This document shows positions 10,870 to 48,165 of a DNA stretch of 64,000 nt, one piece after another. The notes beneath the pieces were generated by a model. The model worked only from the letters and a program-made list of their open reading frames with translations. It did not search any database and was not told the DNA's origin. How positions within the stretch are numbered: position 1 is the stretch's first letter; each line of letters opens with the position of its first letter. The translations under genes were made by a program, and so were the position numbers. The stretch spans positions 124,001-188,000 of IMG/VR virus record IMGVR_UViG_3300050120_000230. The stretch is one strand, 5' to 3'.

Positions 10870-12465
<1,596 letters not shown>

Positions 12466-32210: not shown

Positions 32211-32558
32211 ATGGAAAACATGGGCAAGACGACGATTGATCTGGCTGACGACAAGCAGATGGTCATCTCGAAAGATTTCGATGAAGATTTGGGACACCCG
32301 GTCTACACGGCCACGGTGCAAGGGGAGCCTAGCCCGGTCGCAAAAATTGTCGAAAGTGATATCGATAACTGGCTGAGCAATCAAACGCTCGCCAAGTCGT
32401 TGCAAGCACACGGCCTTACGAACCAAGCGGTCAACAATGCTCTAGAAGGTCTGGCTAATTTCCACGCCAGCTTCAAGACCGACGAAAACACCACGTTCGA
32501 TGTGAGCGTTGATCCCGTCCACGAATCGGTGGGCGTCGGAGTGACGATCAAGTTCTAA
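32211..32558 (+). CDS. Hypothetical late protein
   Basis: CTAAATA at 32199. Confidence 0.65.
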   Translation: MENMGKTTIDLADDKQMVISKDFDEDLGHPVYTATVQGEPSPVAKIVESDIDNWLSNQTLAKSLQAHGLTNQAVNNALEGLANFHASFKTDENTTFDVSVDPVHESVGVGVTIKF

Positions 32559-32815
32559 GGAACAAGTTTCTCGACCGTCCAGATGCCGAGTTCTTCGCCA
32601 TATGGATCGACACCGATTTCGCCACGACACAGCGATGTCCACGCCGTCCCAACCCATCCATTTTCGTATTCGGGCATCCCGGCGCCGCAGAGGCTCAACT
32701 GATAGCCGAGATGTTTTTCCAGAGCGTGGTCGAACGCTGCGGGATCATGCGTCGCATCGTCATCTTCGAACGTGAATTTCTGCTCGCCGTTCAAAAACAC
32801 AACATACGTCGTCAT
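32555..32815 (-). CDS. Hypothetical protein
   Basis: Coding-like 3' part of track ORF 32555-33061; start uncertain. Confidence 0.55.
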   Translation of the reverse strand: MTTYVVFLNGEQKFTFEDDDATHDPAAFDHALEKHLGYQLSLCGAGMPEYENGWVGTAWTSLCRGEIGVDPYGEELGIWTVEKLVP

Positions 32816-32944
32816 CGCAAACCCCATCTCGTGCAACGAATACATATCATCAACTGGTTTGGGTGGAAAGGCCGCGAGTGCACTCCGCACCGTTTCGGCA
32901 AATCCCGCTACGCATAGCGGGCAGACTAGCGGCCGGTCCCAGCC

Positions 32945-33611
32945 TTTCCCCCAAACCAATTGAGTGGTGAGTGTCGGACGACACAGTCCTGTCGGTCTGC
33001 ATCCAGATTCCCGAGTCGGGCATTGCTCCCGAATTCTCCGCGAGGGGGTTATGATACCCAAGCGGTGGTGCTGTTACCCTCGGCGACAACTCAGCGGCCA
33101 TCCCTCCACCCGTCATCCCTCGACCCGAAAGTTGCCGGGATGGCGAATTCGTGGCACCCACTTCGTTGCACAATCAACCCCGGTATGGACTGCCGGGATG
33201 TGCACTAAAGGAGGGGGCAAGGCGCCGCAAGCTGGTCCCCTCTTTTTCTACCGAACTTCAGATGTCCAATCCTACGTGCTCGGCGACAGTTCGAATATTC
33301 CGCTACTGGGGGTCCTTTTTCAGGAGGCAGTCTACCCCCTTACTAAAAGACCCTTTTCGCGAGGACATCCGCTCTCCCCGATCTGCGCTGCGGAGACTAA
33401 CCCGCCCGCTCTGACCGAAGTGCGCTACGCCCAAAACCCTTCGTGTGGTTACAAGAACCCCCGGCTCAATACGCTTAGGCTCAGCCCGCATTGGGCCTGC
33501 CCCAGCAACCTTCCGGCGTTGAAACCGGCGTTTACGCGTCTTCGCTTACCGCACCCCACCACGAGGTGTTTCGGCTAGAGATGGTGGCCCGGAGGCTCAT
33601 GTAACCACACG
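32945..33611 (-). ncRNA. Candidate large structured ncRNA A (GOLLD/ROOL-class-like)
   Basis: No credible ORF; 23-bp stem between 33589-33611 and 33442-33464; many hairpins; lies next to tRNA-like units. Confidence 0.6.
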
Positions 33612-33618
33612 CATACTG

Positions 33619-33718
33619 TGCGGGGACTAGGGCTCGAACCTAGTGTCTTCCCTACCTCACCGAGTGTGGCCACACCCTCGTATAGTAGGACTGCTCTAAC
33701 CCGCTGAGCTACCCAACA
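33619..33718 (-). ncRNA. Degenerate tRNA-like unit with a hairpin insert in the anticodon loop
   Basis: D-arm AGCTCAGCGGGTTAGAGC and T-arm CTAGGTTCGAGCCCTAG; poor acceptor stem. Confidence 0.55.
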
Positions 33719-33776
33719 AAACCTTTTCGGACTTACCGGTTCATCACCGCGCCGAGCGTGCCCCGAAGGGCGGAAT

Positions 33777-33881
33777 TGGCACCACGAGGAAGACTTGCAC
33801 TTCCATACCCTTGTCAACAGCAAGGCTCATCATATTCCCGCAGATCGTGGCCACGATCTCCGGCTTTTAGATCACCGTGGT
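33777..33881 (-). ncRNA. tRNA-Asn(GTT)-like unit with ~30-nt insert
   Basis: Acceptor ACCACGG/TCGTGGT-G-CCA, T-arm GGAAG-TGCAAGT-CTTCC, arm CCTTG-CTGTTGA-CAAGG. Confidence 0.55.
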
Positions 33882-33940
33882 ATCTCGTGCCCTCTCGGGC
33901 ATGTTCATGTTGGTAGCCGTTCCCCGCTAAGGGACAGTCT

Positions 33941-33997
33941 TATTCGTGGTGGGGATCGAACCCACGACCCAAGGCTCTACCGCTGAGCTACACGACC
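33941..33997 (-). ncRNA. Mini tRNA-like unit lacking the anticodon arm
   Basis: GGTCGTG-TAGCTCAGCGGTAGAGC-CTTGGGTC-GTGGGTTCGATCCCCAC-CACGAAT. Confidence 0.6.
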
Positions 33998-34014
33998 TAC
34001 ACTACCACACTTTC

Positions 34015-34688
34015 ACTCAGTTCGCGTGCACGCTCCCCGAGCTAAACCTAGATTGCGTGAACCTCTCAACGATAGAGCGGAAGGATCAGGCCGCTTCATT
34101 GCTTCCACGGCCCATACGATCCAATCACCACGCAACCAAACCTTCGTGCCCATTCGGGCGAAATCTCCAACCACGCCCTCGCTCTAAGCGAACGACAACG
34201 GATCGGCGAGGTGTCATCGCTGTCTAGCCCACGATGGTCCCCTTCGGATCGCTCACGCTATATTTCAAGACGCAGCGCCGCAACTTTTTGCCCATTCAGG
34301 CGAATTGGTGGAGGGACTTCCCTCTCCAACGAAGCGGCTCGCGCGGGGCCATCTCCAAAGTCGGAGTGTGAAGTTGGGCCTACCCCCTAAGCAATGGCAT
34401 TTCGGCCACTCAGGTTTATCCCACTTTTCCAGCCTAGTCTCGGGTCTAGAAATCCCTACCTTCAGCTTCTCTCGACACTGAGGGCCAGACACTTCCTCCT
34501 GAACCCTCGCGAGGGTTAGAGAATCTGCGCTGACACTTTTAGCTCGGAATGCTCACGCAATCCCGCCTCAGTAATTCGTGTTGCCTTCCCGAGATCAGAA
34601 CGCTGGTAAACCGCCGGGCCAAACCCTTTGGCTCTTCCAAGGACTTCTGGTTAGCTAATGCCGAACCAGCGCCCCGTTCTCAAGAACA
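34015..34688 (-). ncRNA. Candidate large structured ncRNA B (ROOL/GOLLD-class-like)
   Basis: Own promoter at 34694-34721; 12-bp long-range stem between 34551-34562 and 34051-34062; dense hairpins. Confidence 0.6.
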
Positions 34689-34791
34689 ACCTCAATCTAC
34701 ACCGCCCCCGAGAACGGTCAAGCAATTTCTTTTGGTTGACCAAAAATCTTTTCGTGGGAGTATTCAATCTATAGTCAGCCGGGAGAACCAT

Positions 34792-35262
34792 GTGCAATAC
34801 GAGACCCACATCTTCAGCAAGAATGAGCCGTGGGCCACCGAATGGCACATCCTCTACTTGACAGCCGCCGACGCGGAGAAGGTGTTTCTCAGCACAAATG
34901 AATCCGTGAAAGGCTACCGTCGCAACGGTGGCGAATGGGCGCGCGCCAGTCATGATAGCTATCGCTATCTCAGGCGTGAAGTTGATGAATGGGTCCGTGC
35001 CAATGCCGGACCCCAAGAAGGTGAAGTGTGGGAATGCGACCGCTACTACCACGCGGACGAGCCTCTCCCAGCATTGCCGCAACGCGCCGGTCGCCGAGCA
35101 TGGCTGGATGCCTTCAAATGCTGGCCAGAAGTCTACGGAAACTACCATCATCACCAGTGGGCGGCCGGATCGCACCTCGACACCGAAAAGAAAGGGATCA
35201 GAGCTTTCATTCGGTTCAGAAGCGAGACGACCGCTGTGCTGTTCAGGACGCTGTTCCTGTAA
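34792..35262 (+). CDS. Hypothetical protein, FxxxxDAxxFKLxW family
   Basis: GTG start after GGGAGA; VDEWVRANAG...FRSETTAVLFRTLF. Confidence 0.7.
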   Translation: MQYETHIFSKNEPWATEWHILYLTAADAEKVFLSTNESVKGYRRNGGEWARASHDSYRYLRREVDEWVRANAGPQEGEVWECDRYYHADEPLPALPQRAGRRAWLDAFKCWPEVYGNYHHHQWAAGSHLDTEKKGIRAFIRFRSETTAVLFRTLFL

Positions 35263-35264
35263 AT

Positions 35265-35338
35265 TGGCAGGGGTGGAGAGAATCGAACTCTCGTCTTGGG
35301 TTTTGGAGACCCCTACTCTACCATTGAGCTACACCCCT
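35265..35338 (-). tRNA. tRNA-Trp(CCA)
   Basis: Cloverleaf, loop CT-CCA-AA, CCA end. Confidence 0.93.
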
Positions 35339-35418
35339 ATTAGATAACTTGGGATACCACCGGTTGCAAATCAGGATATATACGTAATACTTACGTATTT
35401 CCGGGGGCTATCACGACA

Positions 35419-35688
35419 ATGACTACTCCATCTACGATCAACGGCGCCACTGTGACTATTGTCAGGATTGGCAAATCTCTCGTTTCCTTGCAGTCACAAA
35501 ATCTCGTCACACAACCCGCAAGCGCCGGGCAGATGTCCTTCCAGATCAATTGCGATTCGAAGCTGCTGATCGCGAACTCGAAGATCACGATTTTCTCTTC
35601 GACGTTCGGTGCGAAGATCGACAACGTCACCGTCCTCGCCGATCATTTCGGCGCGGGTAGTCACCAGATCACTGGCCACGTCATCTGA
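35419..35688 (+). CDS. Hypothetical protein
   Basis: 89-aa ORF inside the tRNA array, antisense to it. Confidence 0.6.
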   Translation: MTTPSTINGATVTIVRIGKSLVSLQSQNLVTQPASAGQMSFQINCDSKLLIANSKITIFSSTFGAKIDNVTVLADHFGAGSHQITGHVI

Positions 35689-35692
35689 ATTG

Positions 35693-35782
35693 AGAATCAG
35701 GTGGGACTCGAACCCACGGGGACAAGCTTCGCTTGTTACGGGGGTAAAAACCCCGCCCTCTCGCCGCTGAGGTGACTGATCC
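35693..35782 (-). tRNA. Atypical tRNA-Lys(TTT) with long variable arm
   Basis: Loop TT-TTT-AC, V-arm ACAAGC-GAA-GCTTGT, U73, no CCA. Confidence 0.7.
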
Positions 35783-35822
35783 ATTTATTGAACATTCGTA
35801 GAGATATCAATACTATTGGTTA

Positions 35823-36416
35823 ATGTTTTGTGAATTTTGTTCTGACTTGATTTCTTCTCGATATGGTTCTGGTCGTTTTTGTTCTTCCAAAAGTGCCAGA
35901 GGTTTCAGCACCAAAGCTAGGCGCGCAGAGATCAATTCCAAGGTCAGCAAGAAATTATCGAATAGACCGTCTGGTCGAACGCTCGATTGCGTGACCATTT
36001 CTTTTCTGGCTGACAAACGACGTGAAAAACTCATGGAACTGCCATGGGAATCAATTGGCCTATACGCCAAAAAATCTCGCGTTCTGGGTGAACAAAATCA
36101 CCGGTGCAATGGATGCAACCTTGATGAATGGCGGGGCCAGCCGTTGGTTTTGGAAATCGAACATAAAGATGGCAATAACCAAAACAACGCCCGAGAAAAT
36201 CTCGAAGGCTTGTGTCCGAATTGCCATAGCCAAACGCCAACATGGCGTGGTCGTAACAAGGGTCGATCTAAATCAATCTCAGATCAAGAATTCATCGAAC
36301 ATCTGCAAGCTGCTAGCAGCATTCATCGCGCGCTGTTGAGCTTAGGTCTCTCAGCGAAGGGAACGAATTATAACCGTGCGAGAACTCTCATCCAATCACA
36401 TGGCATTTCTATGTGA
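35823..36416 (+). CDS. HNH homing endonuclease
   Basis: CNGC...LEIEHKDGNNQNN..ENL..LCPNCHSQT. Confidence 0.92.
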   Translation: MFCEFCSDLISSRYGSGRFCSSKSARGFSTKARRAEINSKVSKKLSNRPSGRTLDCVTISFLADKRREKLMELPWESIGLYAKKSRVLGEQNHRCNGCNLDEWRGQPLVLEIEHKDGNNQNNARENLEGLCPNCHSQTPTWRGRNKGRSKSISDQEFIEHLQAASSIHRALLSLGLSAKGTNYNRARTLIQSHGISM

Positions 36417-36492
36417 TGGTGAACCCCCTCGGATTTGAACCGAGAATCTCCTCCTTAAAAGGGAGTTGCATTAACCGTTATGCTAGGGGTCC
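36417..36492 (-). tRNA. tRNA-Lys(TTT)
   Basis: Loop CT-TTT-AA, CCA end. Confidence 0.9.
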
Positions 36493-36493
36493 G

Positions 36494-36634
36494 TTAGAAA
36501 GTAGCATTCAGAGGTGAATTCATCTCGGGATATTCTGTCGCGAGAACAGACCCTTCATATGTTCCCCAGCCAACGAAAGCCAGAACTAAAGCAATGATTG
36601 TGGTGCCGAGCGCGATTTTGAATGTCTTTTGCAT
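36494..36634 (-). CDS. Small membrane protein inside the tRNA operon
   Basis: MQKTFKIALGTTIIALVLAFVGWG..., 46 aa, not in the ORF track. Confidence 0.5.
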   Translation of the reverse strand: MQKTFKIALGTTIIALVLAFVGWGTYEGSVLATEYPEMNSPLNATF

Positions 36635-36678
36635 AGCAACAATTTATCTCTCTGAGATGTTGCGATGCAATATATTTG

Positions 36679-36762
36679 AGGGCGCGGTGGGACTCGAACC
36701 CACGGTGTGCTTACGCAAAAAGATTAAGAGTCTTCCCCCTTCGCCGCTCGGGACACGCGCCC
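36679..36762 (-). tRNA. Atypical tRNA-Lys(CTT) with long variable arm
   Basis: Loop CT-CTT-AA, V-arm TGC-GTAA-GCA, U73, no CCA. Confidence 0.75.
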
Positions 36763-36766
36763 ATGT

Positions 36767-36841
36767 TGGTGGATCGGGAGAGATTCGAACTCTCGACCTT
36801 GGGCTTAAGAGGCCCCTGCACTACCGCTGTGCTACCAATCC
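36767..36841 (-). tRNA. tRNA-Lys(CTT)
   Basis: Canonical cloverleaf, CCA end. Confidence 0.93.
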
Positions 36842-36845
36842 ATTG

Positions 36846-36933
36846 TAGTCCTGCTTGGATTCGAACCAAGATCACGCCCCGATCTGGGACTACGGATTAT
36901 AAATCCGACGCTCTGCCGTTGAGCTACAGGACC
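36846..36933 (-). tRNA. tRNA-Ile(TAT) with long variable arm
   Basis: Loop TT-TAT-AA, V-arm GTCCC-AGATC-GGGGC. Confidence 0.8.
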
Positions 36934-36991
36934 AAAGGGTCTGCTGTAGCAGCGATATTCGTTTACTCATTTGGTCCTCCTCTTTTTGCTG

Positions 36992-37075
36992 TGCGCTCGG
37001 CTGGGCTCGAACCAGCAAGACCTTCCGGCCGCTCCGTTTTAAGTGGAGTGTGGCTACCAGTTTCACCACGAGCGC
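36992..37075 (-). tRNA. tRNA-Leu(TAA)
   Basis: Type II cloverleaf, loop CT-TAA-AA. Confidence 0.9.
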
Positions 37076-37080
37076 ATGAT

Positions 37081-37162
37081 TGGTGCCCCTCCTCGGATTC
37101 GAACCGAGATGCTTTCGCGCCAGATTTTGAATCTGGTGTGTCTACCGTTCCACCAGAGGGGC
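37081..37162 (-). tRNA. tRNA-Leu(CAA)
   Basis: Type II cloverleaf, CCA end. Confidence 0.93.
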
Positions 37163-37205
37163 ATAGAAACCTGAAGATCACATGGCGTGAACCTCAAGTC
37201 CATAT

Positions 37206-37287
37206 TGGTGCGGATGGAGGGAATCGAACCCCCACGCTTTCGCAACAGATTCTAAATCTGCCGTGGCTACCGTTACACCACATCCGC
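37206..37287 (-). tRNA. tRNA-Leu(TAG)
   Basis: Type II cloverleaf, CCA end. Confidence 0.93.
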
Positions 37288-37295
37288 ATTGTAGT

Positions 37296-37382
37296 TGGTG
37301 CGAATAGCAGGACTCGAACCTGCACGGCCTTTCGGCCACTGACTTCTGAAGCCAGCGCGTCTACCTATTCCGCCATACTCGC
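37296..37382 (-). tRNA. tRNA-Leu(CAG)
   Basis: Type II cloverleaf, CCA end. Confidence 0.93.
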
Positions 37383-37390
37383 ATTGTATT

Positions 37391-37472
37391 TGGTGCCCAG
37401 AACAGGACTCGAACCTGCACGCCGAAGCAACATCCTCTCAGAATGCCGTGTCTACCGTTTCACCATCTGGGC
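37391..37472 (-). tRNA. tRNA-Leu(GAG)
   Basis: Type II cloverleaf, CCA end. Confidence 0.9.
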
Positions 37473-37480
37473 ATTGTAGT

Positions 37481-37556
37481 TGGCACAACCGACTGGGCTC
37501 GAACCAGTGGCCTCATCCTTCGGAGGGATGCGCTCTTCCAACTGAGCTACGGCTGT
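37481..37556 (-). tRNA. tRNA-Arg(CCG)
   Basis: Loop CT-CCG-AA, CCA end. Confidence 0.93.
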
Positions 37557-37568
37557 AAATGATGTGCT

Positions 37569-37645
37569 TGGCAGAGACGACAGGGATCGAACCTGTGACC
37601 TCCTGATTCGTAGTCAGGCGCTCGTTCCGGCTGAGCTACGCCTCT
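37569..37645 (-). tRNA. tRNA-Arg(ACG)
   Basis: Loop CT-ACG-AA, CCA end. Confidence 0.93.
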
Positions 37646-37670
37646 GCAAAGCACATCATCGAAGTGTGTT

Positions 37671-37746
37671 TGGCTGGAACGGAGGGGATCGAACCCACGA
37701 CCTTCAATTCCGCAAACTGACGCTCTTCCAACTGAGCTACGTCCCA
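37671..37746 (-). tRNA. tRNA-Arg(GCG)
   Basis: Loop TT-GCG-GA, CCA end; this anticodon is uncommon in bacteria. Confidence 0.85.
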
Positions 37747-42891: not shown

Positions 42892-42966
42892 AGTCTCTTA
42901 GCTCAGCGGTAGAGCAGCGTCTTGATAAGGCGAAGGTCACTGGTTCAATCCCAGTAGGGACTACCA
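42892..42966 (+). tRNA. tRNA-Ile(GAT)
   Basis: Cloverleaf, CCA end. Confidence 0.93.
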
Positions 42967-42981
42967 AATCGCAGGACTTAC

Positions 42982-43056
42982 GGGCGAATAACTCAGCGGT
43001 AGAGTGCCTCTTTCACACGGAGGAAGCCGGGGGTTCGATCCCCTCTTCGCCCACCA
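42982..43056 (+). tRNA. tRNA-Val(CAC)
   Basis: Cloverleaf, CCA end. Confidence 0.93.
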
Positions 43057-43084
43057 CTACTCGATGAGTGACGTAGCTCATCAA

Positions 43085-43100
43085 GGTCTTTGACATCGTT
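43085..43100 (+). promoter_or_regulatory. rrn-like boxA antitermination site
   Basis: GGTCTTTGACATCGTT followed by a GC-rich hairpin. Confidence 0.6.
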
Positions 43101-43160
43101 GATAGCGTGAAATAACGGCCGCTCCCGTGATCGGGGGCGGCCGACTAAGAAGAGTTTTGC

Positions 43161-43233
43161 TGAGGATTAGTTCAGTTGGTAGAACGCCACACTCTGAATG
43201 TGGATGTCCGAGGTTCGAGTCCTTGATCCTCAG
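43161..43233 (+). tRNA. tRNA-Gln(CTG)
   Basis: Loop CT-CTG-AA; no CCA; acceptor stem extended by 13 bp. Confidence 0.88.
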
Positions 43234-43290
43234 CAAAACTCTTCTAGTTTTTTCACAAGCGTCCGTCGCAAGACGGCGCCTGTGAACTAA

Positions 43291-43375
43291 TGGGGAATGG
43301 TGTAATGGTAACATCCCTGACTTTGAATCAGGAGACGAGGAGTTTATGTAGGTTCGAGCCCTACTTCCCCAGCCA
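43291..43375 (+). tRNA. tRNA-Gln(TTG) with enlarged variable region
   Basis: Loop CT-TTG-AA, 15-nt variable region, CCA end. Confidence 0.85.
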
Positions 43376-43397
43376 TATTTTACGCGATGTGTTTTGG

Positions 43398-43475
43398 TGC
43401 GGGATGGTAGCAGTCTGGTAGCTCGTTAGCCTCATAAGCTAAAGGTCAGCGGTTCAAATCCGCTTCCCGCACCCA
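43398..43475 (+). tRNA. tRNA-Met(CAT), initiator-like body
   Basis: fMet-like D and T arms, but anticodon stem TTAGC/GCTAA lacks the three G-C pairs. Confidence 0.85.
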
Positions 43476-43495
43476 AACACATCGCGAACCTTTGA

Positions 43496-43573
43496 CGCGG
43501 GAAGGACAAGACAGTTAGTCACTAGCCTCATAAGCTAGACATCTGGCAGATGCGAGCACTGCTCCCGCACCCA
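43496..43573 (+). tRNA. Divergent tRNA-Met(CAT)-like gene
   Basis: C1xA72, loop CT-CAT-AA, non-canonical D and T loops, CCA end. Confidence 0.6.
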
Positions 43574-43648
43574 AACTTGGCACGGTGATGAACCGGTAAG
43601 TCCACAGAGTTATTGACTTGGTGCTACGAAAATCCGTAGCTGCAAGGT

Positions 43649-43981
43649 ATGAATGATCCACCCAAATTCGTCCGAGCCAGCCGCGAATATCGAGAGCATC
43701 TCATCGCTTTCGTTCAGCGGGCAGTTTGGGCGAGAGGACAGCCGGGTTTCGAGTTCGATGTGATGGGACGAACGTTCCTGATCGCGACCGAGACTGACTA
43801 CCTTCCGGGTTGGTCAGCCCGGCCTCTAACTCAACCGGACTTGATCTTCTTCAAAATGTTGTCGCGAGAACGCGATGACAACCACTGGGGCGCCTATTGG
43901 CGTCGCGGCAAGGGGATGAAGGTTTACGGAAACAGCACCGTATTCGAGCGGGACATGCTTTTCCTCAAGTTCGCAGAATAA
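43649..43981 (+). CDS. Hypothetical protein
   Basis: 110 aa, C-terminus FERDMLFLKF. Confidence 0.7.
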   Translation: MNDPPKFVRASREYREHLIAFVQRAVWARGQPGFEFDVMGRTFLIATETDYLPGWSARPLTQPDLIFFKMLSRERDDNHWGAYWRRGKGMKVYGNSTVFERDMLFLKFAE

Positions 43982-44146
43982 GCGAAATATCGTACAACAC
44001 GAAAAGCGATAAATCGTGCAAGGAATCATCGGGATCAGCGTCGGCAGTTCCTCCCCTCGGGGTGTGAAAACGGACCCCCGGTGACTTAGGCTAGAGGGTT
44101 GTAGGTGACCTGTATTTGACTGGGAACCTTCGTCCATGTGTTTTGT

Positions 44147-44223
44147 CAGGGTGTAGCTCAGTCTGGTAGAGTGGCGTCCTCGGATGGCGAGGGTCGCAGG
44201 TTCAAATCCTGCCACCCTGACCA
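44147..44223 (+). tRNA. tRNA-Pro(CGG)
   Basis: Loop CT-CGG-AT, CCA end. Confidence 0.9.
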
Positions 44224-44240
44224 AACACATGGTTCACCAA

Positions 44241-44393
44241 ATGGATGTGCTTTCCGAGAGGCATGTTGTGCATCGTCAAGAACAATCACCGTCCGTAGAG
44301 GGACGCCCGAGCGGGTTGCGGAGATTGTAGGAGACGATGTGCCAAGCGCGCGAACGGCTGCAAATCGGCATGTCTCGCGGTAAGCACATCCAT
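44241..44393 (+). ncRNA. Candidate ~150-nt rod-like ncRNA
   Basis: Ends pair (ATGGATGTGCTT..AAGCACATCCAT); internal stems GCATCGTC/GACGATGT and ACAATC/GATTGT. Confidence 0.5.
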
Positions 44394-44395
44394 GA

Positions 44396-44471
44396 TGGAT
44401 AGTAGCTCAGTTGGTAGAGCTTTCGGTTGTTACCCGAATGGTCGCAGGTTCGAGCCCTGCCTATCCAGCCA
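44396..44471 (+). tRNA. tRNA-Asn(GTT), variant loop
   Basis: Loop TT-GTT-AC, CCA end. Confidence 0.9.
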
Positions 44472-44490
44472 AAATGACCTTCGGGTCTGA

Positions 44491-44565
44491 TTGGACGTAG
44501 CACAATGGTAGTGCAACTCCCTGTTAAGGAGAAGGTTGTAGGTTCGAGTCCTACCGTCCGAGCCA
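44491..44565 (+). tRNA. tRNA-Asn(GTT)
   Basis: Loop CT-GTT-AA, CCA end. Confidence 0.92.
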
Positions 44566-44655
44566 TTTCTGGGTGGGCTGCAACCCCCAACTTCATCCAT
44601 CGGGTGAAGAGGTGAGACGCACAAAGCGCGTCTCTGACAAAGCGCAGCACATCAT

Positions 44656-44731
44656 GGGGCCATAGCTCAGTTGGTAGAGCGATTCCTCGGCAGGGAATAG
44701 GTCGCCGGTTCGACTCCGGCTGGCTCCACCA
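44656..44731 (+). tRNA. tRNA-Ala(GGC)
   Basis: G3:U70, loop TC-GGC-AG (C33), CCA end. Confidence 0.88.
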
Positions 44732-44837
44732 TTAAAGAAAGCCCCGCTGTTTCCAGCGAGGCTCCCTAGACCGAATCCACCACCGCACCGAAGCGCGGAC
44801 ATCAAAGGTGGACATCGTCACAAGGGATGTCAAGACC

Positions 44838-44887
44838 CGCTGTCCAAGGCTTGGACGGCACTCGCTGTCCAAGGCTTGGACAGCACT
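44838..44887. repeat. Tandem 25-bp hairpin repeat
   Basis: CGCTGTCCAAGGCTTGGAC(G/A)GCACT x2. Confidence 0.85.
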
Positions 44888-44984
44888 CCGCACGGTGATG
44901 AGCCGATAAGTCGGCAGATTTTGCCCACCAAAAAAGGCCCCGGCGAACCGGGGCCTTGATGGCACTGCACCGAAGTGCGGATGC

Positions 44985-45182
44985 TTAGGCGGTTTCGGCG
45001 TCCGAGCGGGTCGCGTATTCGGCCTTCAGGGATTCGAGGATCGACTGCTTGGCGGTGGCGTCGGTGACCGACGTTTCGCCGAGTTCGCGTTCGACCTTGG
45101 AAATGGCGTTCTTGATGTGCGGGGTTGCCATCTTCGACACCGGGGTTTCCGTGGTGCCGGACTTCCAGACTGCTTCAGCCAC
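44985..45182 (-). CDS. Hypothetical protein
   Basis: 65 aa, GGAGG RBS; M.T.HI.NAI motif; followed by a terminator. Confidence 0.7.
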   Translation of the reverse strand: MAEAVWKSGTTETPVSKMATPHIKNAISKVERELGETSVTDATAKQSILESLKAEYATRSDAETA

Positions 45183-45304
45183 AAGGGCCTCCTTGGTAGG
45201 TGGGTGGGAGTGCTAACCGGTTTGGTTAACGAAAACCATATATCCACCCCTGCGGCGTCATGTCAACAGCACAAAATCGTGCACTGCTCGTTGAGGGAAA
45301 ACAC

Positions 45305-45378
45305 GGGGTAATAGCTCAATGGTCGAGCACCGGCTTCGCAAGTCGGGGATCAGGGTTCGATTCCCTGTTACTCCACCA
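45305..45378 (+). tRNA. tRNA-Ala(CGC)
   Basis: G3:U70, CCA end. Confidence 0.92.
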
Positions 45379-45403
45379 AACATAAATAGTTTCAACTACA
45401 TAT

Positions 45404-45479
45404 GCTGTCTTAGCTCAGTTGGTAGAGCGCCGTATTGGTAATGCGGAGGTGGTGGGTTCGATCCCCGCAGTCAGCACCA
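45404..45479 (+). tRNA. tRNA-Thr(GGT)
   Basis: Cloverleaf, CCA end. Confidence 0.93.
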
Positions 45480-45482
45480 TTT

Positions 45483-45559
45483 CAGGGTATAGCGCAGCAT
45501 GGTAGCGCGTCACGTCGGGAACGTGAAGGTCGCAGGTTCAAATCCTGCTATCCTGACCA
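45483..45559 (+). tRNA. tRNA-Pro(GGG)
   Basis: Loop TC-GGG-AA (C33, A37), CCA end. Confidence 0.88.
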
Positions 45560-45565
45560 ATTAGG

Positions 45566-45871
45566 TCAATCCATACAGAACGGATTGGCGATGTTCGTCA
45601 GCGGCACAGTGTCCAAGATGATCGGGTTTTTGAAGAACTCGGACGTAAATTGATGCGAACCATTCGGGTTCATATATCGACGAGTTGCGGCCGTTTGGGC
45701 TCCCTTGACGGTTTTGAATACGCCGCTGAACCACATGATTTTATCAGCATCGCGTGGTGAGGTAACGCCGTACTGCCAAACGGTCATACCTTTCGGGTGT
45801 TCGATCCCTCTGGCATAGAACTTCTGCTCAATGGGAGCGTCATTCTCCGTGATGATTTCTCTCATACGCAT
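45566..45871 (-). CDS. Hypothetical late protein
   Basis: MRMREIITEND start, CTAAATA at 45877. Confidence 0.65.
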   Translation of the reverse strand: MRMREIITENDAPIEQKFYARGIEHPKGMTVWQYGVTSPRDADKIMWFSGVFKTVKGAQTAATRRYMNPNGSHQFTSEFFKNPIILDTVPLTNIANPFCMD

Positions 45872-45904
45872 ATGAATATTTAGGCCGCATGGCCAAACAG
45901 ACAT

Positions 45905-45981
45905 CGGGGTGTAGCTCAGCTTGATAGAGCATCCGGTTTGGGACCGGAGGGTCGGAGGTTTGAGTCCTCTCGCCCCGACCA
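45905..45981 (+). tRNA. tRNA-Pro(TGG)
   Basis: Loop TT-TGG-GA, CCA end. Confidence 0.92.
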
Positions 45982-46010
45982 ATTCAGAGACCTTCCCAAA
46001 GGGTCTCTAC

Positions 46011-46087
46011 GGTAATGTAGCTCAGTCAGGTAGAGCAGCGGGCTCATAACTCGCGTGTCGCTGGTTCGATCCCAGCCATTACCACCA
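46011..46087 (+). tRNA. tRNA(CAT), elongator Met or Ile2
   Basis: Loop CT-CAT-AA, A73, CCA end. Confidence 0.9.
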
Positions 46088-46088
46088 C

Positions 46089-46163
46089 GGACGATTAACT
46101 CAGCGGTAGAGTGCCTCTATGACATGGAGGAAGCCACTGGTTCGATCCCAGTATCGTCCACCA
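46089..46163 (+). tRNA. tRNA-Val(GAC)
   Basis: Loop AT-GAC-AT, CCA end. Confidence 0.9.
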
Positions 46164-46225
46164 ATTTACTTGACGAAACGCCCGTCCATGAGATCATATG
46201 TTGATCTTGCAAAGGGAGGGCATCC

Positions 46226-46501
46226 ATGACGACTGTGAAACTCTCCGAAGCGGAACACAACGCTCTCTCACTTCTGGTTCGCTCGGGCGGCTCGATCCTC
46301 ACGTCGGCCATTCCCGATAAGAACGAGAAGGACGTGTTTGACAACGTCGAGGCAGGCATCAAGGTCTACGTGAAACTTGAGACCCGTGGTCTGGTTGTCG
46401 TGACCGAGGAAGAGCCGTTCGAACTTGAAGACGGCACCGAGTTCCAGTTCACGAACGAAGTCTACATCACCGACGAAGGTCGGCACGCTATCAACCGCTA
46501 A
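46226..46501 (+). CDS. Hypothetical protein
   Basis: 91 aa, GGAGG RBS. Confidence 0.75.
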   Translation: MTTVKLSEAEHNALSLLVRSGGSILTSAIPDKNEKDVFDNVEAGIKVYVKLETRGLVVVTEEEPFELEDGTEFQFTNEVYITDEGRHAINR

Positions 46502-46564
46502 CAGGCCACATATGGCCTATTAGGCGCCGGAAACGGTTCTAATAGGCCAACTATGGCCTCTTAT

Positions 46565-46639
46565 GCTTGGGTAGCTCAGGGGTAGAGCAGTGGGCTGAAA
46601 ATCCGCGTGTCGTTGGTTCGATTCCAACTCCAAGCACCA
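46565..46639 (+). tRNA. tRNA-Phe(GAA)
   Basis: Loop CT-GAA-AA, CCA end. Confidence 0.93.
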
Positions 46640-46809
46640 TTTTGGTTATTTTGACCGCAAGGTAGATCATACCGCCCGGCCAAAGCAAACCGCCCCACAA
46701 AACTTGGCACAGAAATGTGCACAAGTCGAAGTGGTTGGATTTGATCTCTATGACCTGAAGAAGGCCCCAGAAGATCAATCCAATCAAAGAGTAAACAATC
46801 CATGGGCTC

Positions 46810-47940
46810 ATGCCCATATTTAGAGAGGAACGGTCCCTTGGAGTTTCACGGCTAAGCCCAGAGCGCCTTAATCGGTATCTGGCACTGCAAGATTTGACCG
46901 ACGCATCGTCGGGCGAACACGCAATCAACCTCGTGCTGGACAAGCTGGTAACGGCAATTGAGCAATGGTCGGGCCTCAAGGCAGACATCGTTCGGTCCAC
47001 TCCTATCGTTTCCGTTCGGGACAACTACGACCGGCTCTACTATGAGCCGGACGCGGTCGCACGCTCTGCGCGCTATTCCCACTACGTTGACGATGAGCAC
47101 ATTCTTCGCACCCACACGACGGCGGCCATTCCCGGCCTGCTGACGGAGACCACGGCCGACCGGCTGATGGTTCTACCGGGTCTTGTCTATCGCCGCGATG
47201 TGATGGATCGGATGCATGTGGGAGAACCGCACCAAGTCGATCTCTGGGTCGCTAGGCGGTCAAGGCTCCGTCGTGATGATCTGTTGAAGATGATCGGCGC
47301 GGTTCTCAACGCGATCCTGCCCGGCTGCGAATACCGCTGCAACGAGACAATCCATCCATACACAGTAAATGGCTTGGAGGTCGAGGTTCGTGTGGACGAC
47401 CGGTGGATAGAGGTGCTCGAATGTGGGGAAATCCATCCGTGGCTTTTGAACGACAACGGCTTGCCTAGTCAGGAGTGGTCGGGCTTGGCGATGGGGCTGG
47501 GCCTAGACCGCCTTGTAATGCTCCTGAAGGGCATGGACGACATTCGGCTGCTTCGCAGCACGGATGCTCGTATTGCCCGCCAGATGGCTTCCCTGAGCCC
47601 CTACGAGGCTGTTTCGAACCAACCTATGACCAAGCGGGATATGTCGCTCACGGTGAGTGATCCTGACATCGAATTGATCGGAGATCGCATCCGGGTGGCG
47701 CTCGGTGATCGGGCTGACTGGTTGGAAGAGATCGTGGTCGTTTCGGCATCGAGTTGGGATGAAGTCCCGGCCGTGGCGAGGGAGCGTCTTGGGATGGCGC
47801 CTGAGCACACGAACCTGTTGCTGCGGCTCATCATGCGCTCACCGTCCGAGAGCATTCCGAAAGAGATCGCCAACGAAATCTACGACATAGTCTATGGCGA
47901 GCTTCACGAAGGATCGGCGGGGTATCAGCGTGTATCATAA
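46810..47940 (+). CDS. Single-chain PheRS-alpha-related class II ligase with C-terminal FDX-ACB-like domain
   Basis: LRTHTTA, motif 2 GLVYRRD..DR.H...PHQ.D, HPYT, W.EVLECG..HP, motif 3 GLAMGLGLDRL.ML..G..DIRLL, then RDMS domain. Confidence 0.88.
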   Translation: MPIFREERSLGVSRLSPERLNRYLALQDLTDASSGEHAINLVLDKLVTAIEQWSGLKADIVRSTPIVSVRDNYDRLYYEPDAVARSARYSHYVDDEHILRTHTTAAIPGLLTETTADRLMVLPGLVYRRDVMDRMHVGEPHQVDLWVARRSRLRRDDLLKMIGAVLNAILPGCEYRCNETIHPYTVNGLEVEVRVDDRWIEVLECGEIHPWLLNDNGLPSQEWSGLAMGLGLDRLVMLLKGMDDIRLLRSTDARIARQMASLSPYEAVSNQPMTKRDMSLTVSDPDIELIGDRIRVALGDRADWLEEIVVVSASSWDEVPAVARERLGMAPEHTNLLLRLIMRSPSESIPKEIANEIYDIVYGELHEGSAGYQRVS

Positions 47941-47958
47941 ACAAGACGGGAAGGCCCT

Positions 47959-48088
47959 TAATGCATCGTTTATGATGCACTACGGTCGATTTCACAGTCT
48001 AGTGCATCAGTTTTGATGCATTACGCAATTCGCCAAAAATGACGAGTTATGAACAAAAATAGCCCTAACTCGTCAAAATTGGCGAATT
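47959..48088. repeat. Two nested-palindrome inverted repeats
   Basis: 47959-48023 and 48027-48088; each arm is itself a quasi-palindrome; a third copy of the design lies at 46503-46559. Confidence 0.75.
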
Positions 48089-48090
48089 AT

Positions 48091-48165
48091 GTCGATGTAG
48101 CTTAGTGGCTAAAGCATCCGGTTGAAACCCGGAGATCGGCGGTTCGAACCCGCCCATCGGCACCA
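48091..48165 (+). tRNA. tRNA-Phe(GAA), variant
   Basis: Loop TT-GAA-AC, divergent body, CCA end. Confidence 0.9.

What the first reader, a model, noticed from the sequence alone, without database searches (positions are those of the whole stretch)
34015..34721. Large ornate ncRNA candidate B with its own promoter
Seen: TTGACC-N16-TAGATT (34721-34694) fires into ~670 nt with no credible ORF on that strand. GATTGCGTGAGC (34562-34551) pairs with GTTCACGCAATC (34062-34051), and the adjacent GCATTCCGAGCT pairs with AGCTCGGGGAGC, enclosing ~490 nt of hairpins (e.g. AACCCTCGCGAGGGTT). With RNA A and the tRNA-like units it could form a single ~1.75-kb non-coding transcript.
Basis: partly seen in the sequence, partly recalled or inferred. 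Interest (0 to 1): 0.7.

Follow-up and report, generated by a model that had tools for sequence, protein, structure and literature searches.

The report
Modular noncoding RNA array, huge phage

Summary
The window is part of a 415-kb IMG/VR huge-phage record. It heads about 1.9 kb (34690-32860) with no conserved ORF. "RNA B" is not an evolutionary unit. Only its middle (core, 34445-34285) is conserved, in five other phage-like contigs. There 49 pairs are 96.6% paired and 8 show compensatory changes (0 of 500 shuffles reach this). The 5' 240 nt and the 34284-34141 cassette are lineage-specific, and 34140-34048 is shared with one relative. Just downstream, a tRNA-like unit lacking the anticodon arm (33997-33941) sits inside a covarying leader-trailer helix. 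Modules close with a stem followed by a UUYGCYCG-loop-GRGCA hairpin, and their order differs between phages. Its 3' arm pairs locally in a module kept in a relative, and 26 of 60 shuffles contain equally long helices. ROOL, GOLLD and all other Rfam models give nothing. No RNA-seq run was listed. Best reading: a new modular structured-RNA array in a phage tRNA island, analogous to GOLLD/ROOL in setting but not a member. Its function is unknown and any mechanism is inferred.

The parts
34694..34721 (-). Sigma-70-type promoter: -35 TTGACC (34721-34716), 16-nt spacer, -10 TAGATT (34699-34694). Predicted start near 34687.
   Evidence: Hexamers conserved and spacer variable in L172, L233, L235 and L248. 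The start site is inferred, not mapped.
34730..34746 (.). Palindrome TTTTTGGTCAACCAAAA just upstream of the -35. It contains TTGACC on the plus strand, a possible -35 or operator for the divergent 156-aa gene.
   Evidence: Conserved in the four loci where the neighbouring gene is divergent (window, L172, L233, L235) and absent in L248, where the gene is in tandem. The role is inferred.
34446..34686 (-). Lineage-specific 5' domain of 'B'.
   Evidence: No homologue in any fetched locus except its last ~29 nt. z = -2.3 on the minus strand and -0.9 on the plus strand. Soil relatives diverge 5' of 34433.
34285..34445 (-). Conserved core RNA. P1 is 34430-34419 with 34313-34302. P2 hairpin is 34414-34386, P3 is 34385-34376, and the long P4 arm is 34373-34317. 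The terminal punctuation hairpin GCCU-GAAU-GGGC is 34301-34290.
   Evidence: 77-85% identical in L248, L233, L172, L249 and G005/L093. Model R2 scores 189-236 bits. 49 pairs are 96.6% paired and 8 show changes on both sides, against 2.7+-1.4 in shuffles (0 of 500 as high); slid controls give 0-5.
34141..34284 (-). Lineage-specific cassette ('module 2') ending in a second punctuation hairpin UUUCGCCCGAAUGGGCA (34163-34147).
   Evidence: No homologue apart from the hairpin. In ~95% identical soil relatives, 34136-34283 is replaced by 107 other letters.
34048..34140 (-). Module Mc, closed by the local helix GGUUGCGUGG (34137-34128) with UCACGCAAUC (34060-34051).
   Evidence: MFE and partition function. 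88% identical module in L248 6442-6534, with changed inner hairpin pairs.
34011..34047 (-). L248 has a local two-tier hairpin here instead.
   Evidence: Helix b is thermodynamically favoured in the window but is not conserved and is at chance level.
33888..34010 (-). tRNA-like module. Leader strand 34010-34001 pairs with trailer 33917-33907 and encloses a tRNA-like unit (33997-33941). That unit has acceptor, D and T arms, with 3 nt in place of the anticodon arm. A hairpin (33934-33921) and an end hairpin (33901-33888) follow.
   Evidence: Rfam tRNA 37.3 bits (gathering 29), but not called by ARAGORN. Homologues in L248, L251, L172, L233 and L249 have the anticodon arm absent, stubby or full length. 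34 predicted pairs, 10 with compensatory changes, including the leader-trailer helix and the acceptor stem.
33727..33887 (-). Window-specific insert with a variant punctuation hairpin (33775-33759), then the recurrent element CUCGG-CG-hairpin-GUAAGU-CCGA (33756-33727).
   Evidence: The insert is absent from L172. The GUAAGUCC element recurs in L172, L233 (twice), L248, L249, L250, G005 (three times) and at window 43578-43606 on the plus strand.
33624..33714 (-). tRNA-like unit 2. It has D and T arms, and the anticodon loop is replaced by a 6-bp stem plus an inner hairpin.
   Evidence: Rfam tRNA 19.4 bits, below the gathering score. Conserved in L172 and L233, where the extended stem changes on both sides: UCCUAC/GUAGGG becomes CCUCGC/GCGGGG (read by eye).
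33443..33610 (-). Helix-closed domain: GUGUGGUUACA (33610-33600) pairs with UGUAACCACAC (33453-33443).
   Evidence: Present in L172, L233 and L248. Compensatory changes in L233 (UUGCA/UGCAA, and the end pair G-C to C-G) and L248 (GAUUACA/UGUAAUC) (read by eye). In L233 it lies before, not after, tRNA-like unit 2.
32860..33442 (-). Rest of 'RNA A': a window-specific insert (about 33419-33275) and 3' modules shared with L172. These include the end domain closed by 32949-32940 with 32874-32865.
   Evidence: 72% identity over 413 nt with L172. Alignment A3. The end-domain helix changes on both sides between the window and L172 (read by eye).
34792..35262 (+). Neighbouring 156-aa gene of unknown function (GTG start). 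It is divergent from the array here and adjacent to the array in 7 of the 8 loci found through it.
   Evidence: The AlphaFold model has pLDDT 93.7, with no significant structural match in PDB or AFDB clusters.

Best explanation
The finding is the promoter-proximal part of a roughly 1.9-kb noncoding transcription unit (about 34690 to 32860, minus strand) at the edge of a huge phage's tRNA island. The unit is a string of separately folded RNA modules. Each module is closed by its own stem, and most are followed by a short tetraloop hairpin of the form UUYGCYCG-loop-GRGCA. In the window the order is: lineage-specific 5' domain, conserved core (34445-34285), swappable cassette, module Mc, a tRNA-like module without an anticodon arm, a GUAAGUCC element, a second aberrant tRNA-like unit, a helix-closed domain, and further modules. 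Shown here: the promoter hexamers are conserved; the core and the tRNA-like module are under selection for base pairing; the modules are gained, lost, swapped and reordered between related phages, with at least one breakpoint immediately after a punctuation hairpin. Inferred: the array is transcribed as one precursor from the conserved promoter and yields stable structured RNAs that act through their folds in trans. The tRNA-like domains keep the acceptor/T-arm and D/T elbow, the parts that tRNA-processing and tRNA-binding factors recognise, but cannot decode. They therefore most likely recruit or titrate such factors, or mark processing sites. The hairpins act as module punctuation or as protein or tertiary-contact sites.
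For: Context: a 415-kb virus record with 31 tRNAs in the window, a large terminase and a PheRS-like gene. Promoter conservation. Core: one homologue among 43 terminase-related IMG/VR records, one JGI contig, and three more found through the neighbouring gene. Core covariation. tRNA-like module covariation, including the leader-trailer helix and the graded loss of the anticodon arm. Mosaic conservation. Cassette replacement in soil relatives, with one breakpoint 3 nt after the hairpin. Module reordering. Punctuation hairpin: 2-3 copies in the window array and none elsewhere in the 415-kb genome under the strict pattern; 5 copies in G005 and at least 7 in G002, with stems varying GCCC/GGGC, GCUC/GAGC and GCCUG/CAGGC. 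Independent unit in G005 with its own promoter and terminator. No Rfam family matches. Strand: the minus strand folds better. The literature places GOLLD and ROOL in phages near tRNA islands, with tRNAs sometimes in the GOLLD linker (bioRxiv 10.1101/2024.12.08.627333).
Against: No transcript evidence: no RNA run was listed, so the start site, the ends, co-transcription and processing are all unshown. There are only six full core sequences, all from one phage clade, so the covariation statistics rest on few events. Per-module folding z-scores are weak (-0.4 to -2.3). Pairing of the tRNA-like unit's leader with its trailer argues against simple RNase P release and favours an integrated domain. 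No protein partner was identified, and the adjacent 156-aa protein has no recognisable fold. The window shows no terminator before the next ORF at 32815, so a very long leader is not excluded.
Confidence: 0.6

Rival explanations
1. One reading: B (34015-34721) is one large ornate RNA of the ROOL/GOLLD kind, closed by long-range helices around about 490 nt of hairpins. It may act as an RNA-only assembly.
For: It sits in a phage tRNA island and has its own promoter. It has a variable 5' part plus a conserved part, and a true tRNA is embedded in one homologue (tRNA-Leu in L172). All of this resembles what is reported for GOLLD. The whole-B z-score is about -3, and helix b has probability ~1 in the window.
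Against: There is no match to ROOL (RF03087) or GOLLD (RF02032) in the whole genome at E<=10, nor to any Rfam model in B. Only about 160 of 700 nt are conserved. In L233 the core is followed after about 60 nt by the tRNA-like module, so no enclosing helix exists there. Helix a is excluded, and the long helices are at chance level.
Confidence: 0.12
2. A long structured 5' leader that regulates the downstream minus-strand genes (86-aa ORF 32815-32555 and beyond) in cis.
For: No terminator-like site lies between the promoter and the ORF in the window.
Against: In G005 the homologous array ends in a strong intrinsic terminator, and the next gene has its own promoter-like site. The downstream genes are not conserved between loci. 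In L248 the array follows a gene rather than leading one. The module shuffling is hard to reconcile with a single regulatory leader.
Confidence: 0.1
3. Non-functional debris: decaying tRNA genes and spacer sequence in a tRNA island.
For: Two tRNA-like units have defective anticodon arms. Content varies strongly between relatives.
Against: There are compensatory changes in the core, in the acceptor stem and in the leader-trailer helix. The promoter is conserved. The core is shared at 78% identity with a phage whose terminase is only 65% identical and whose flanking genes are unrelated.
Confidence: 0.05
4. Protein-coding after all: the plus-strand ORF from 34549, or small minus-strand ORFs.
For: A public gene call exists for the 237-aa version (P0001). 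Another gene caller placed plus-strand ORFs over the L234 copy of the array.
Against: Homologues of the plus-strand protein start at the position of GTG 34792. Frames are broken by indels among the core homologues. No Pfam hit is on record for any called ORF in these gaps.
Confidence: 0.03

Closest known systems
GOLLD RNA (Rfam RF02032)
   Same: Large structured noncoding RNA of phages and prophages, encoded beside tRNA islands. It has a conserved part plus a variable part, and tRNAs are sometimes embedded in a linker. The window locus shares the setting, the variable/conserved mosaic and embedded tRNA or tRNA-like units.
   Different: No similarity to the GOLLD covariance model anywhere in the 415-kb genome. 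The conserved part here is a ~140-160-nt core rather than a ~400-nt 3' domain. Modules are reordered between relatives. Oligomeric cage formation is untested.
ROOL RNA (Rfam RF03087)
   Same: A phage-borne, tRNA-island-associated, ORF-free structured RNA of several hundred nt.
   Different: No match to the ROOL model at E<=10. There is no single conserved ~580-nt architecture, and the organisms and habitat differ (peat and soil huge phages).
tRNA mimics embedded in longer RNAs (tmRNA tRNA-like domain, bacterial YrlA Y RNAs, MALAT1-mascRNA processing signal)
   Same: Acceptor/T-arm and D/T elbow are kept, decoding is lost, and the unit is embedded in a larger RNA. Bacterial Y RNAs that mimic tRNA are described in PMC4201824 (listed).
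   Different: ARAGORN finds no tmRNA, and Rfam finds no tmRNA, YrlA-type or mascRNA-menRNA model. Here the anticodon arm is deleted or stubbed rather than replaced by a long helix, and the unit is clamped by a leader-trailer helix. Processing and aminoacylation are untested.
Phage tRNA gene arrays
   Same: Tandem, same-strand, promoter-driven strings of small structured RNA cassettes whose content and order vary between related phages.
   Different: Most cassettes here are not tRNAs. They share a closing stem plus a terminal hairpin rather than a cloverleaf.

Membership tests
ROOL (RF03087) | Scores against the ROOL covariance model (574 positions, gathering 99.1 bits) | tested here: not met
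   No match at E<=10 in the whole 415-kb genome, in 32500-35400 or in B alone. The tool's control genomes also gave nothing, so the sensitivity was not demonstrated. Searches are independent cmscan runs.
ROOL / GOLLD | Encoded in phages or prophages, often next to tRNA islands | tested here: met
   Virus record with terminase. tRNA arrays at 35265-37746 (minus) and 42892-48165 (plus). This is a typical context, not sufficient for membership.
GOLLD (RF02032) | Scores against the GOLLD covariance model (416 positions, gathering 150 bits), i.e. the universally conserved 3' domain | tested here: not met
   No match at E<=10 in the whole genome. None.
ROOL / GOLLD | RNA-only homo-oligomeric nanocage (8-mer or 14-mer) | not testable with these tools
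   Needs cryo-EM or native gels of the transcript (for the known cases).
tRNA (RF00005), for unit 33997-33941 | Cloverleaf with acceptor, D, anticodon and T arms | tested here: not met
   Scores 37.3 bits, above gathering 29. However, 18 model positions (the anticodon arm) are replaced by 3 nt, and ARAGORN does not call it. Homologues show a graded series from a full arm (L249) to none.
tmRNA | tRNA-like domain joined to a tag reading frame and pseudoknots | tested here: not met
   ARAGORN finds no tmRNA in the window or related loci. No Rfam tmRNA hit.
Sigma-70-type promoter | -35 and -10 hexamers at 16-18 nt spacing, conserved in position while the spacer drifts | tested here: met
   9 of 12 consensus matches with a 16-nt spacer. 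Hexamers invariant apart from -35 position 6 (TTGACC or TTGACG) in 5 loci with variable spacers. The start site is not mapped.
Structured RNA (core 34445-34285) | Base pairs maintained by compensatory substitutions beyond controls | tested here: met
   8 pairs changed on both sides against 2.7+-1.4 in shuffles (0 of 500 as high). 96.6% of cells paired against 42-50% when the partners are slid. Only 6 sequences were available.

The most novel reading that the evidence does not exclude
Huge phages of peat and soil carry a previously undescribed class of cassette-like structured-RNA arrays. Stem-closed modules, each tagged by a UUYGCYCG-loop-GRGCA hairpin, are exchanged and reordered between phages. 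They include a new four-helix core RNA and an anticodon-less tRNA mimic clamped by its own leader and trailer. The transcript or its pieces would act as an RNA scaffold or particle, or as a decoy for host tRNA-handling or defence factors, making it a functional cousin of GOLLD/ROOL built on a different, modular principle.
Probability: 0.35. Interest if true: 0.8.

Novelty: new variant of a known kind. Interest (0 to 1): 0.6.

Why it matters
Large structured RNAs in phage tRNA islands (GOLLD, ROOL) are abundant, form striking RNA-only cages, and still have no known function. This is a third, unrelated example in the same genomic niche. It is built from exchangeable modules and contains tRNA look-alikes that have shed their anticodon arm. 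That points to a general link between phage tRNA islands and non-decoding structured RNAs. It also offers small, separable domains (a ~140-nt core and a ~120-nt clamped tRNA mimic) that are easier to test biochemically than 600-800-nt RNAs. In addition, it corrects a public gene call (the 237-aa ORF) and shows that single-sequence long-range pairings in G+C-rich phage DNA should not be trusted without comparative support.

Tried and rejected
- **Rfam:** searched at gathering level on the whole window, and at E<=10 on 32500-35400, on B alone and on the L233 array. Only tRNA hits appeared, plus noise below threshold. RF01998 was searched by mistake; it is a group II intron model, not GOLLD.
- **Isolated phages:** blastn of the region against 50,697 phage records gave no match.
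- **Paralogues in the own genome:** blastn and nhmmer found none. A and B are not related to each other.
- **Flanking small proteins as probes in IMG/VR:** no relatives found.
- **Exact-pattern scans:** IMG/VR returned only G005 plus chance hits. The GTDB genome scan returned 10 chance hits and no model match.
- **Models R1 and R2 on terminase-related records** (43 with R1, 24 with R2): only G005 matched. G002 gave weak 12-bit matches that reflect shared hairpin and stem grammar, not a core.
- **RNase P RNA, tmRNA, SRP, T-box and K-turn sRNA ideas:** these were raised by short motifs (GAGGGAAGU, GGUGAUGA, GGUAAGUCC) and rejected for lack of any Rfam support. The best hit was an archaeal C/D sRNA at E = 0.69.
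- **Analogous closing helices in relatives:** MFE folding of L172, L233 and G005 found none conserved.
- **RNA-seq evidence:** no RNA run was listed.
- **Neighbouring 156-aa protein:** the model is confident, but no structural match reached E<=0.001 in PDB, and no AFDB cluster match had a TM-score above 0.4.

Full report
**Setting.** The window is bases 124001-188000 of a 415,409-bp IMG/VR virus record estimated 72% complete. A DNA run from a peat metagenome holds the whole stretch, and soil metagenomes hold close relatives. The window encodes a T4-type large terminase (10873-12465) and a class II aminoacyl-tRNA synthetase core (46810-47940). It has 31 tRNA genes in two opposed arrays. The finding lies between the minus-strand tRNA array (37746-35265) and a minus-strand 86-aa ORF (32815-32555). 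A plus-strand 156-aa gene (34792-35262, GTG start) separates it from tRNA-Trp. The stretch 34791-32816 has no convincing ORF.

**Checking the observation.** The promoter-like site TTGACC-N16-TAGATT is at 34721-34694 on the minus strand. Such matches are no more frequent here than in shuffles. What makes this one credible is conservation. In the homologous loci L172, L233, L235 and L248 both hexamers are kept at the head of the noncoding region, while the spacer and flanks drift.

The quoted 12-mers are complementary, but their order along the RNA is a, b ... a', b', so the two helices would cross.
- In the partition function, helix a has probability 0.0 at all 12 pairs, and helix b about 1.0.
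- The 3' arm of helix a pairs locally (34137-34128 with 34060-34051), inside a module that recurs at 88% identity in L248.
- In 60 dinucleotide shuffles of B, the longest contiguous long-range helix averaged 12.5 bp, and 26 shuffles reached the observed 13 bp.

The enclosing pairing is therefore present in the sequence but is not evidence of anything. Folding energy favours the minus strand moderately: z about -3.1 to -3.4 against -1.4 to -1.9.

The plus-strand ORF from ATG 34549 is an over-extension. All relatives of the protein are 155-176 aa and align from the GTG at 34792.

**Relatives.** There is no paralogue in the genome, and A and B are unrelated to each other. Nothing matches in 50,697 isolated-phage records. 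Among 43 IMG/VR records related by terminase, only G005 (561 kb, terminase 65% identical) has a match. The match covers 157 nt at 78% identity, corresponding to window 34444-34288. In G005 this sits in a 1.3-kb ORF-poor stretch with its own TTGACA...TAGAGT promoter and a strong intrinsic terminator.

A pattern scan of metagenome contigs gave one more locus, L172. Homologues of the neighbouring 156-aa protein led to L233 (a 570-kb contig in an NCBI assembly), L235, L248, L249, L250 and L251. Of these, L233, L248 and L249 carry the full core. L235 has it cut off by the contig end. L251 has only its first 48 nt.

**What is conserved.** Alignment of the whole region with L172 and segment-wise BLAST against all loci show a mosaic.

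| Conserved | Not conserved |
|---|---|
| Promoter | B's 5' domain 34686-34446 (no homologue) |
| Core 34445-34285 | Cassette 34284-34141 |
| Module 34140-34048 (L248 only) | 33887-33765 |
| tRNA-like module 34010-33888 | About 33419-33275 |
| GUAAGUCC element 33756-33727 | |
| tRNA-like unit 2 (33714-33624) | |
| Helix-closed domain 33610-33443 | |
| 3' part of A (L172 only) | |

Soil metagenome contigs about 95% identical to 33891-34135 and 34284-34433 replace 34136-34283 with 107 other letters, and they diverge 5' of 34433.

Module order also differs between loci.
- In L233 the helix-closed domain precedes tRNA-like unit 2.
- A module that lies 5' of the core in L172 lies far downstream in L233.
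- L172 has a true tRNA-Leu between the core and the tRNA-like module.
- In L249 a tRNA-like unit precedes the core.

'RNA B' is therefore not a unit of conservation.

**Structure by comparison.** For six cores, the RNAalifold structure is P1 closing a junction with hairpins P2 and P3 and a long arm P4, followed by a terminal hairpin. It has 49 pairs with 96.6% of cells paired. Eight pairs changed on both sides, against 2.7+-1.4 in column shuffles (0 of 500 as high) and 0-5 when the partners are slid.

For the tRNA-like module, RNAalifold predicts the acceptor, D and T arms, a following hairpin, and a 10-bp helix between the leader (34010-34001) and the trailer (33917-33907). Ten of its 34 pairs show compensatory changes. 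The anticodon arm is full length in L249, a 4-5-bp stub in L172 and L233, and absent in the window, L248 and L251. The G2-A mismatch of the acceptor stem is kept in all of them.

The recurring hairpin UUYGCYCG-loop-GRGCA occurs 2-3 times in the window's array and nowhere else in the 415-kb genome under the strict pattern. It occurs 5 times in G005 and at least 7 times in a 2-kb array in G002. Its stems vary as GCCC/GGGC, GCUC/GAGC and GCCUG/CAGGC. It follows the 3' strand of the closing stem of the core and of the tRNA-like module. One cassette breakpoint lies 3 nt after it.

**Comparison with known families.** Every Rfam 15 model was run at E<=10 over B alone, over 32500-35400 and over the L233 array. 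Only tRNA matches the tRNA-like units. ROOL (RF03087) and GOLLD (RF02032) find nothing in the whole genome. The resemblance to GOLLD and ROOL is one of setting and style: both are encoded in phages near tRNA islands, GOLLD combines a conserved and a variable part, and tRNAs sometimes occur in the GOLLD linker. Membership is not met.

**Mechanism.**
- *Shown:* a conserved promoter, selection on pairing in at least two modules, and modular exchange.
- *Inferred:* one precursor transcript, with stable structured products acting in trans.

The tRNA-like domains keep exactly the parts recognised by tRNA-processing and tRNA-binding factors while losing decoding. They therefore probably recruit or titrate such factors, or mark processing sites. 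The leader-trailer clamp makes an integrated mimic more likely than a simple RNase P release signal. The hairpins may be punctuation, protein sites or tertiary contacts.

No RNA-seq run could be listed. The adjacent 156-aa protein gives a confident model with no recognisable fold. The function therefore remains open.

**Verdict.** This is a real and apparently undescribed modular structured-RNA locus, of the same general kind as GOLLD and ROOL but not a member of either.

Noticed in passing
window 43476-44146 (+): The plus-strand tRNA island also holds small conserved RNA modules between tRNA-Met and tRNA-Pro. One is a ~110-nt element ending in GGCACGGUGAUGAACCGGUAAGUCC (about 43480-43606), which G005 also has between tRNA-Gln and tRNA-Pro. 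The other is a ~65-nt module at 44028-44090 that recurs in L172, L233 and L249 inside their arrays. A 110-aa ORF (43649-43981) lies between them.
   Followed up: partly
window 35692-35782 (-), 36678-36762 (-), 36845-36933 (-); L233, L235, L248: Several tRNAs come in pairs with the same anticodon, one of normal length and one of 85-94 nt (Lys-ttt 76/91 nt, Lys-ctt 75/85, Trp-cca 74/86-89 in relatives). ARAGORN draws the 91-nt tRNA-Lys(ttt) with a long, class-II-like variable arm, which is unusual for tRNA-Lys.
   Followed up: partly
G002:C1:456100-458000 (-) (loci L254, L256): The closest complete relative (578 kb, terminase 75% identical) lacks the core. It does have a ~2-kb array with at least 7 hairpins of the same type and a tRNA-like unit with a 2-nt 'anticodon'. 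The array architecture is therefore wider than the core family.
   Followed up: partly
window 34549-34791 (+): The public gene call for this genome (237 aa from ATG 34549) is over-extended by 81 codons into the promoter and 5' domain of the RNA array. Homologues support the GTG at 34792, which is preceded by GGGAG.
   Followed up: yes
window 34792-35262 (+) and homologues P0002-P0014: This Trp-rich 156-aa protein family is adjacent to the array in seven of eight loci found through it. It has a confident predicted fold (pLDDT 93.7) with no significant match in PDB or AFDB clusters. It is a candidate partner of the RNA, but nothing links them beyond adjacency.
   Followed up: partly
L251 1-979: One relative carries an IS1595-family DDE transposase gene about 2.5 kb from its truncated array.
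   Followed up: no
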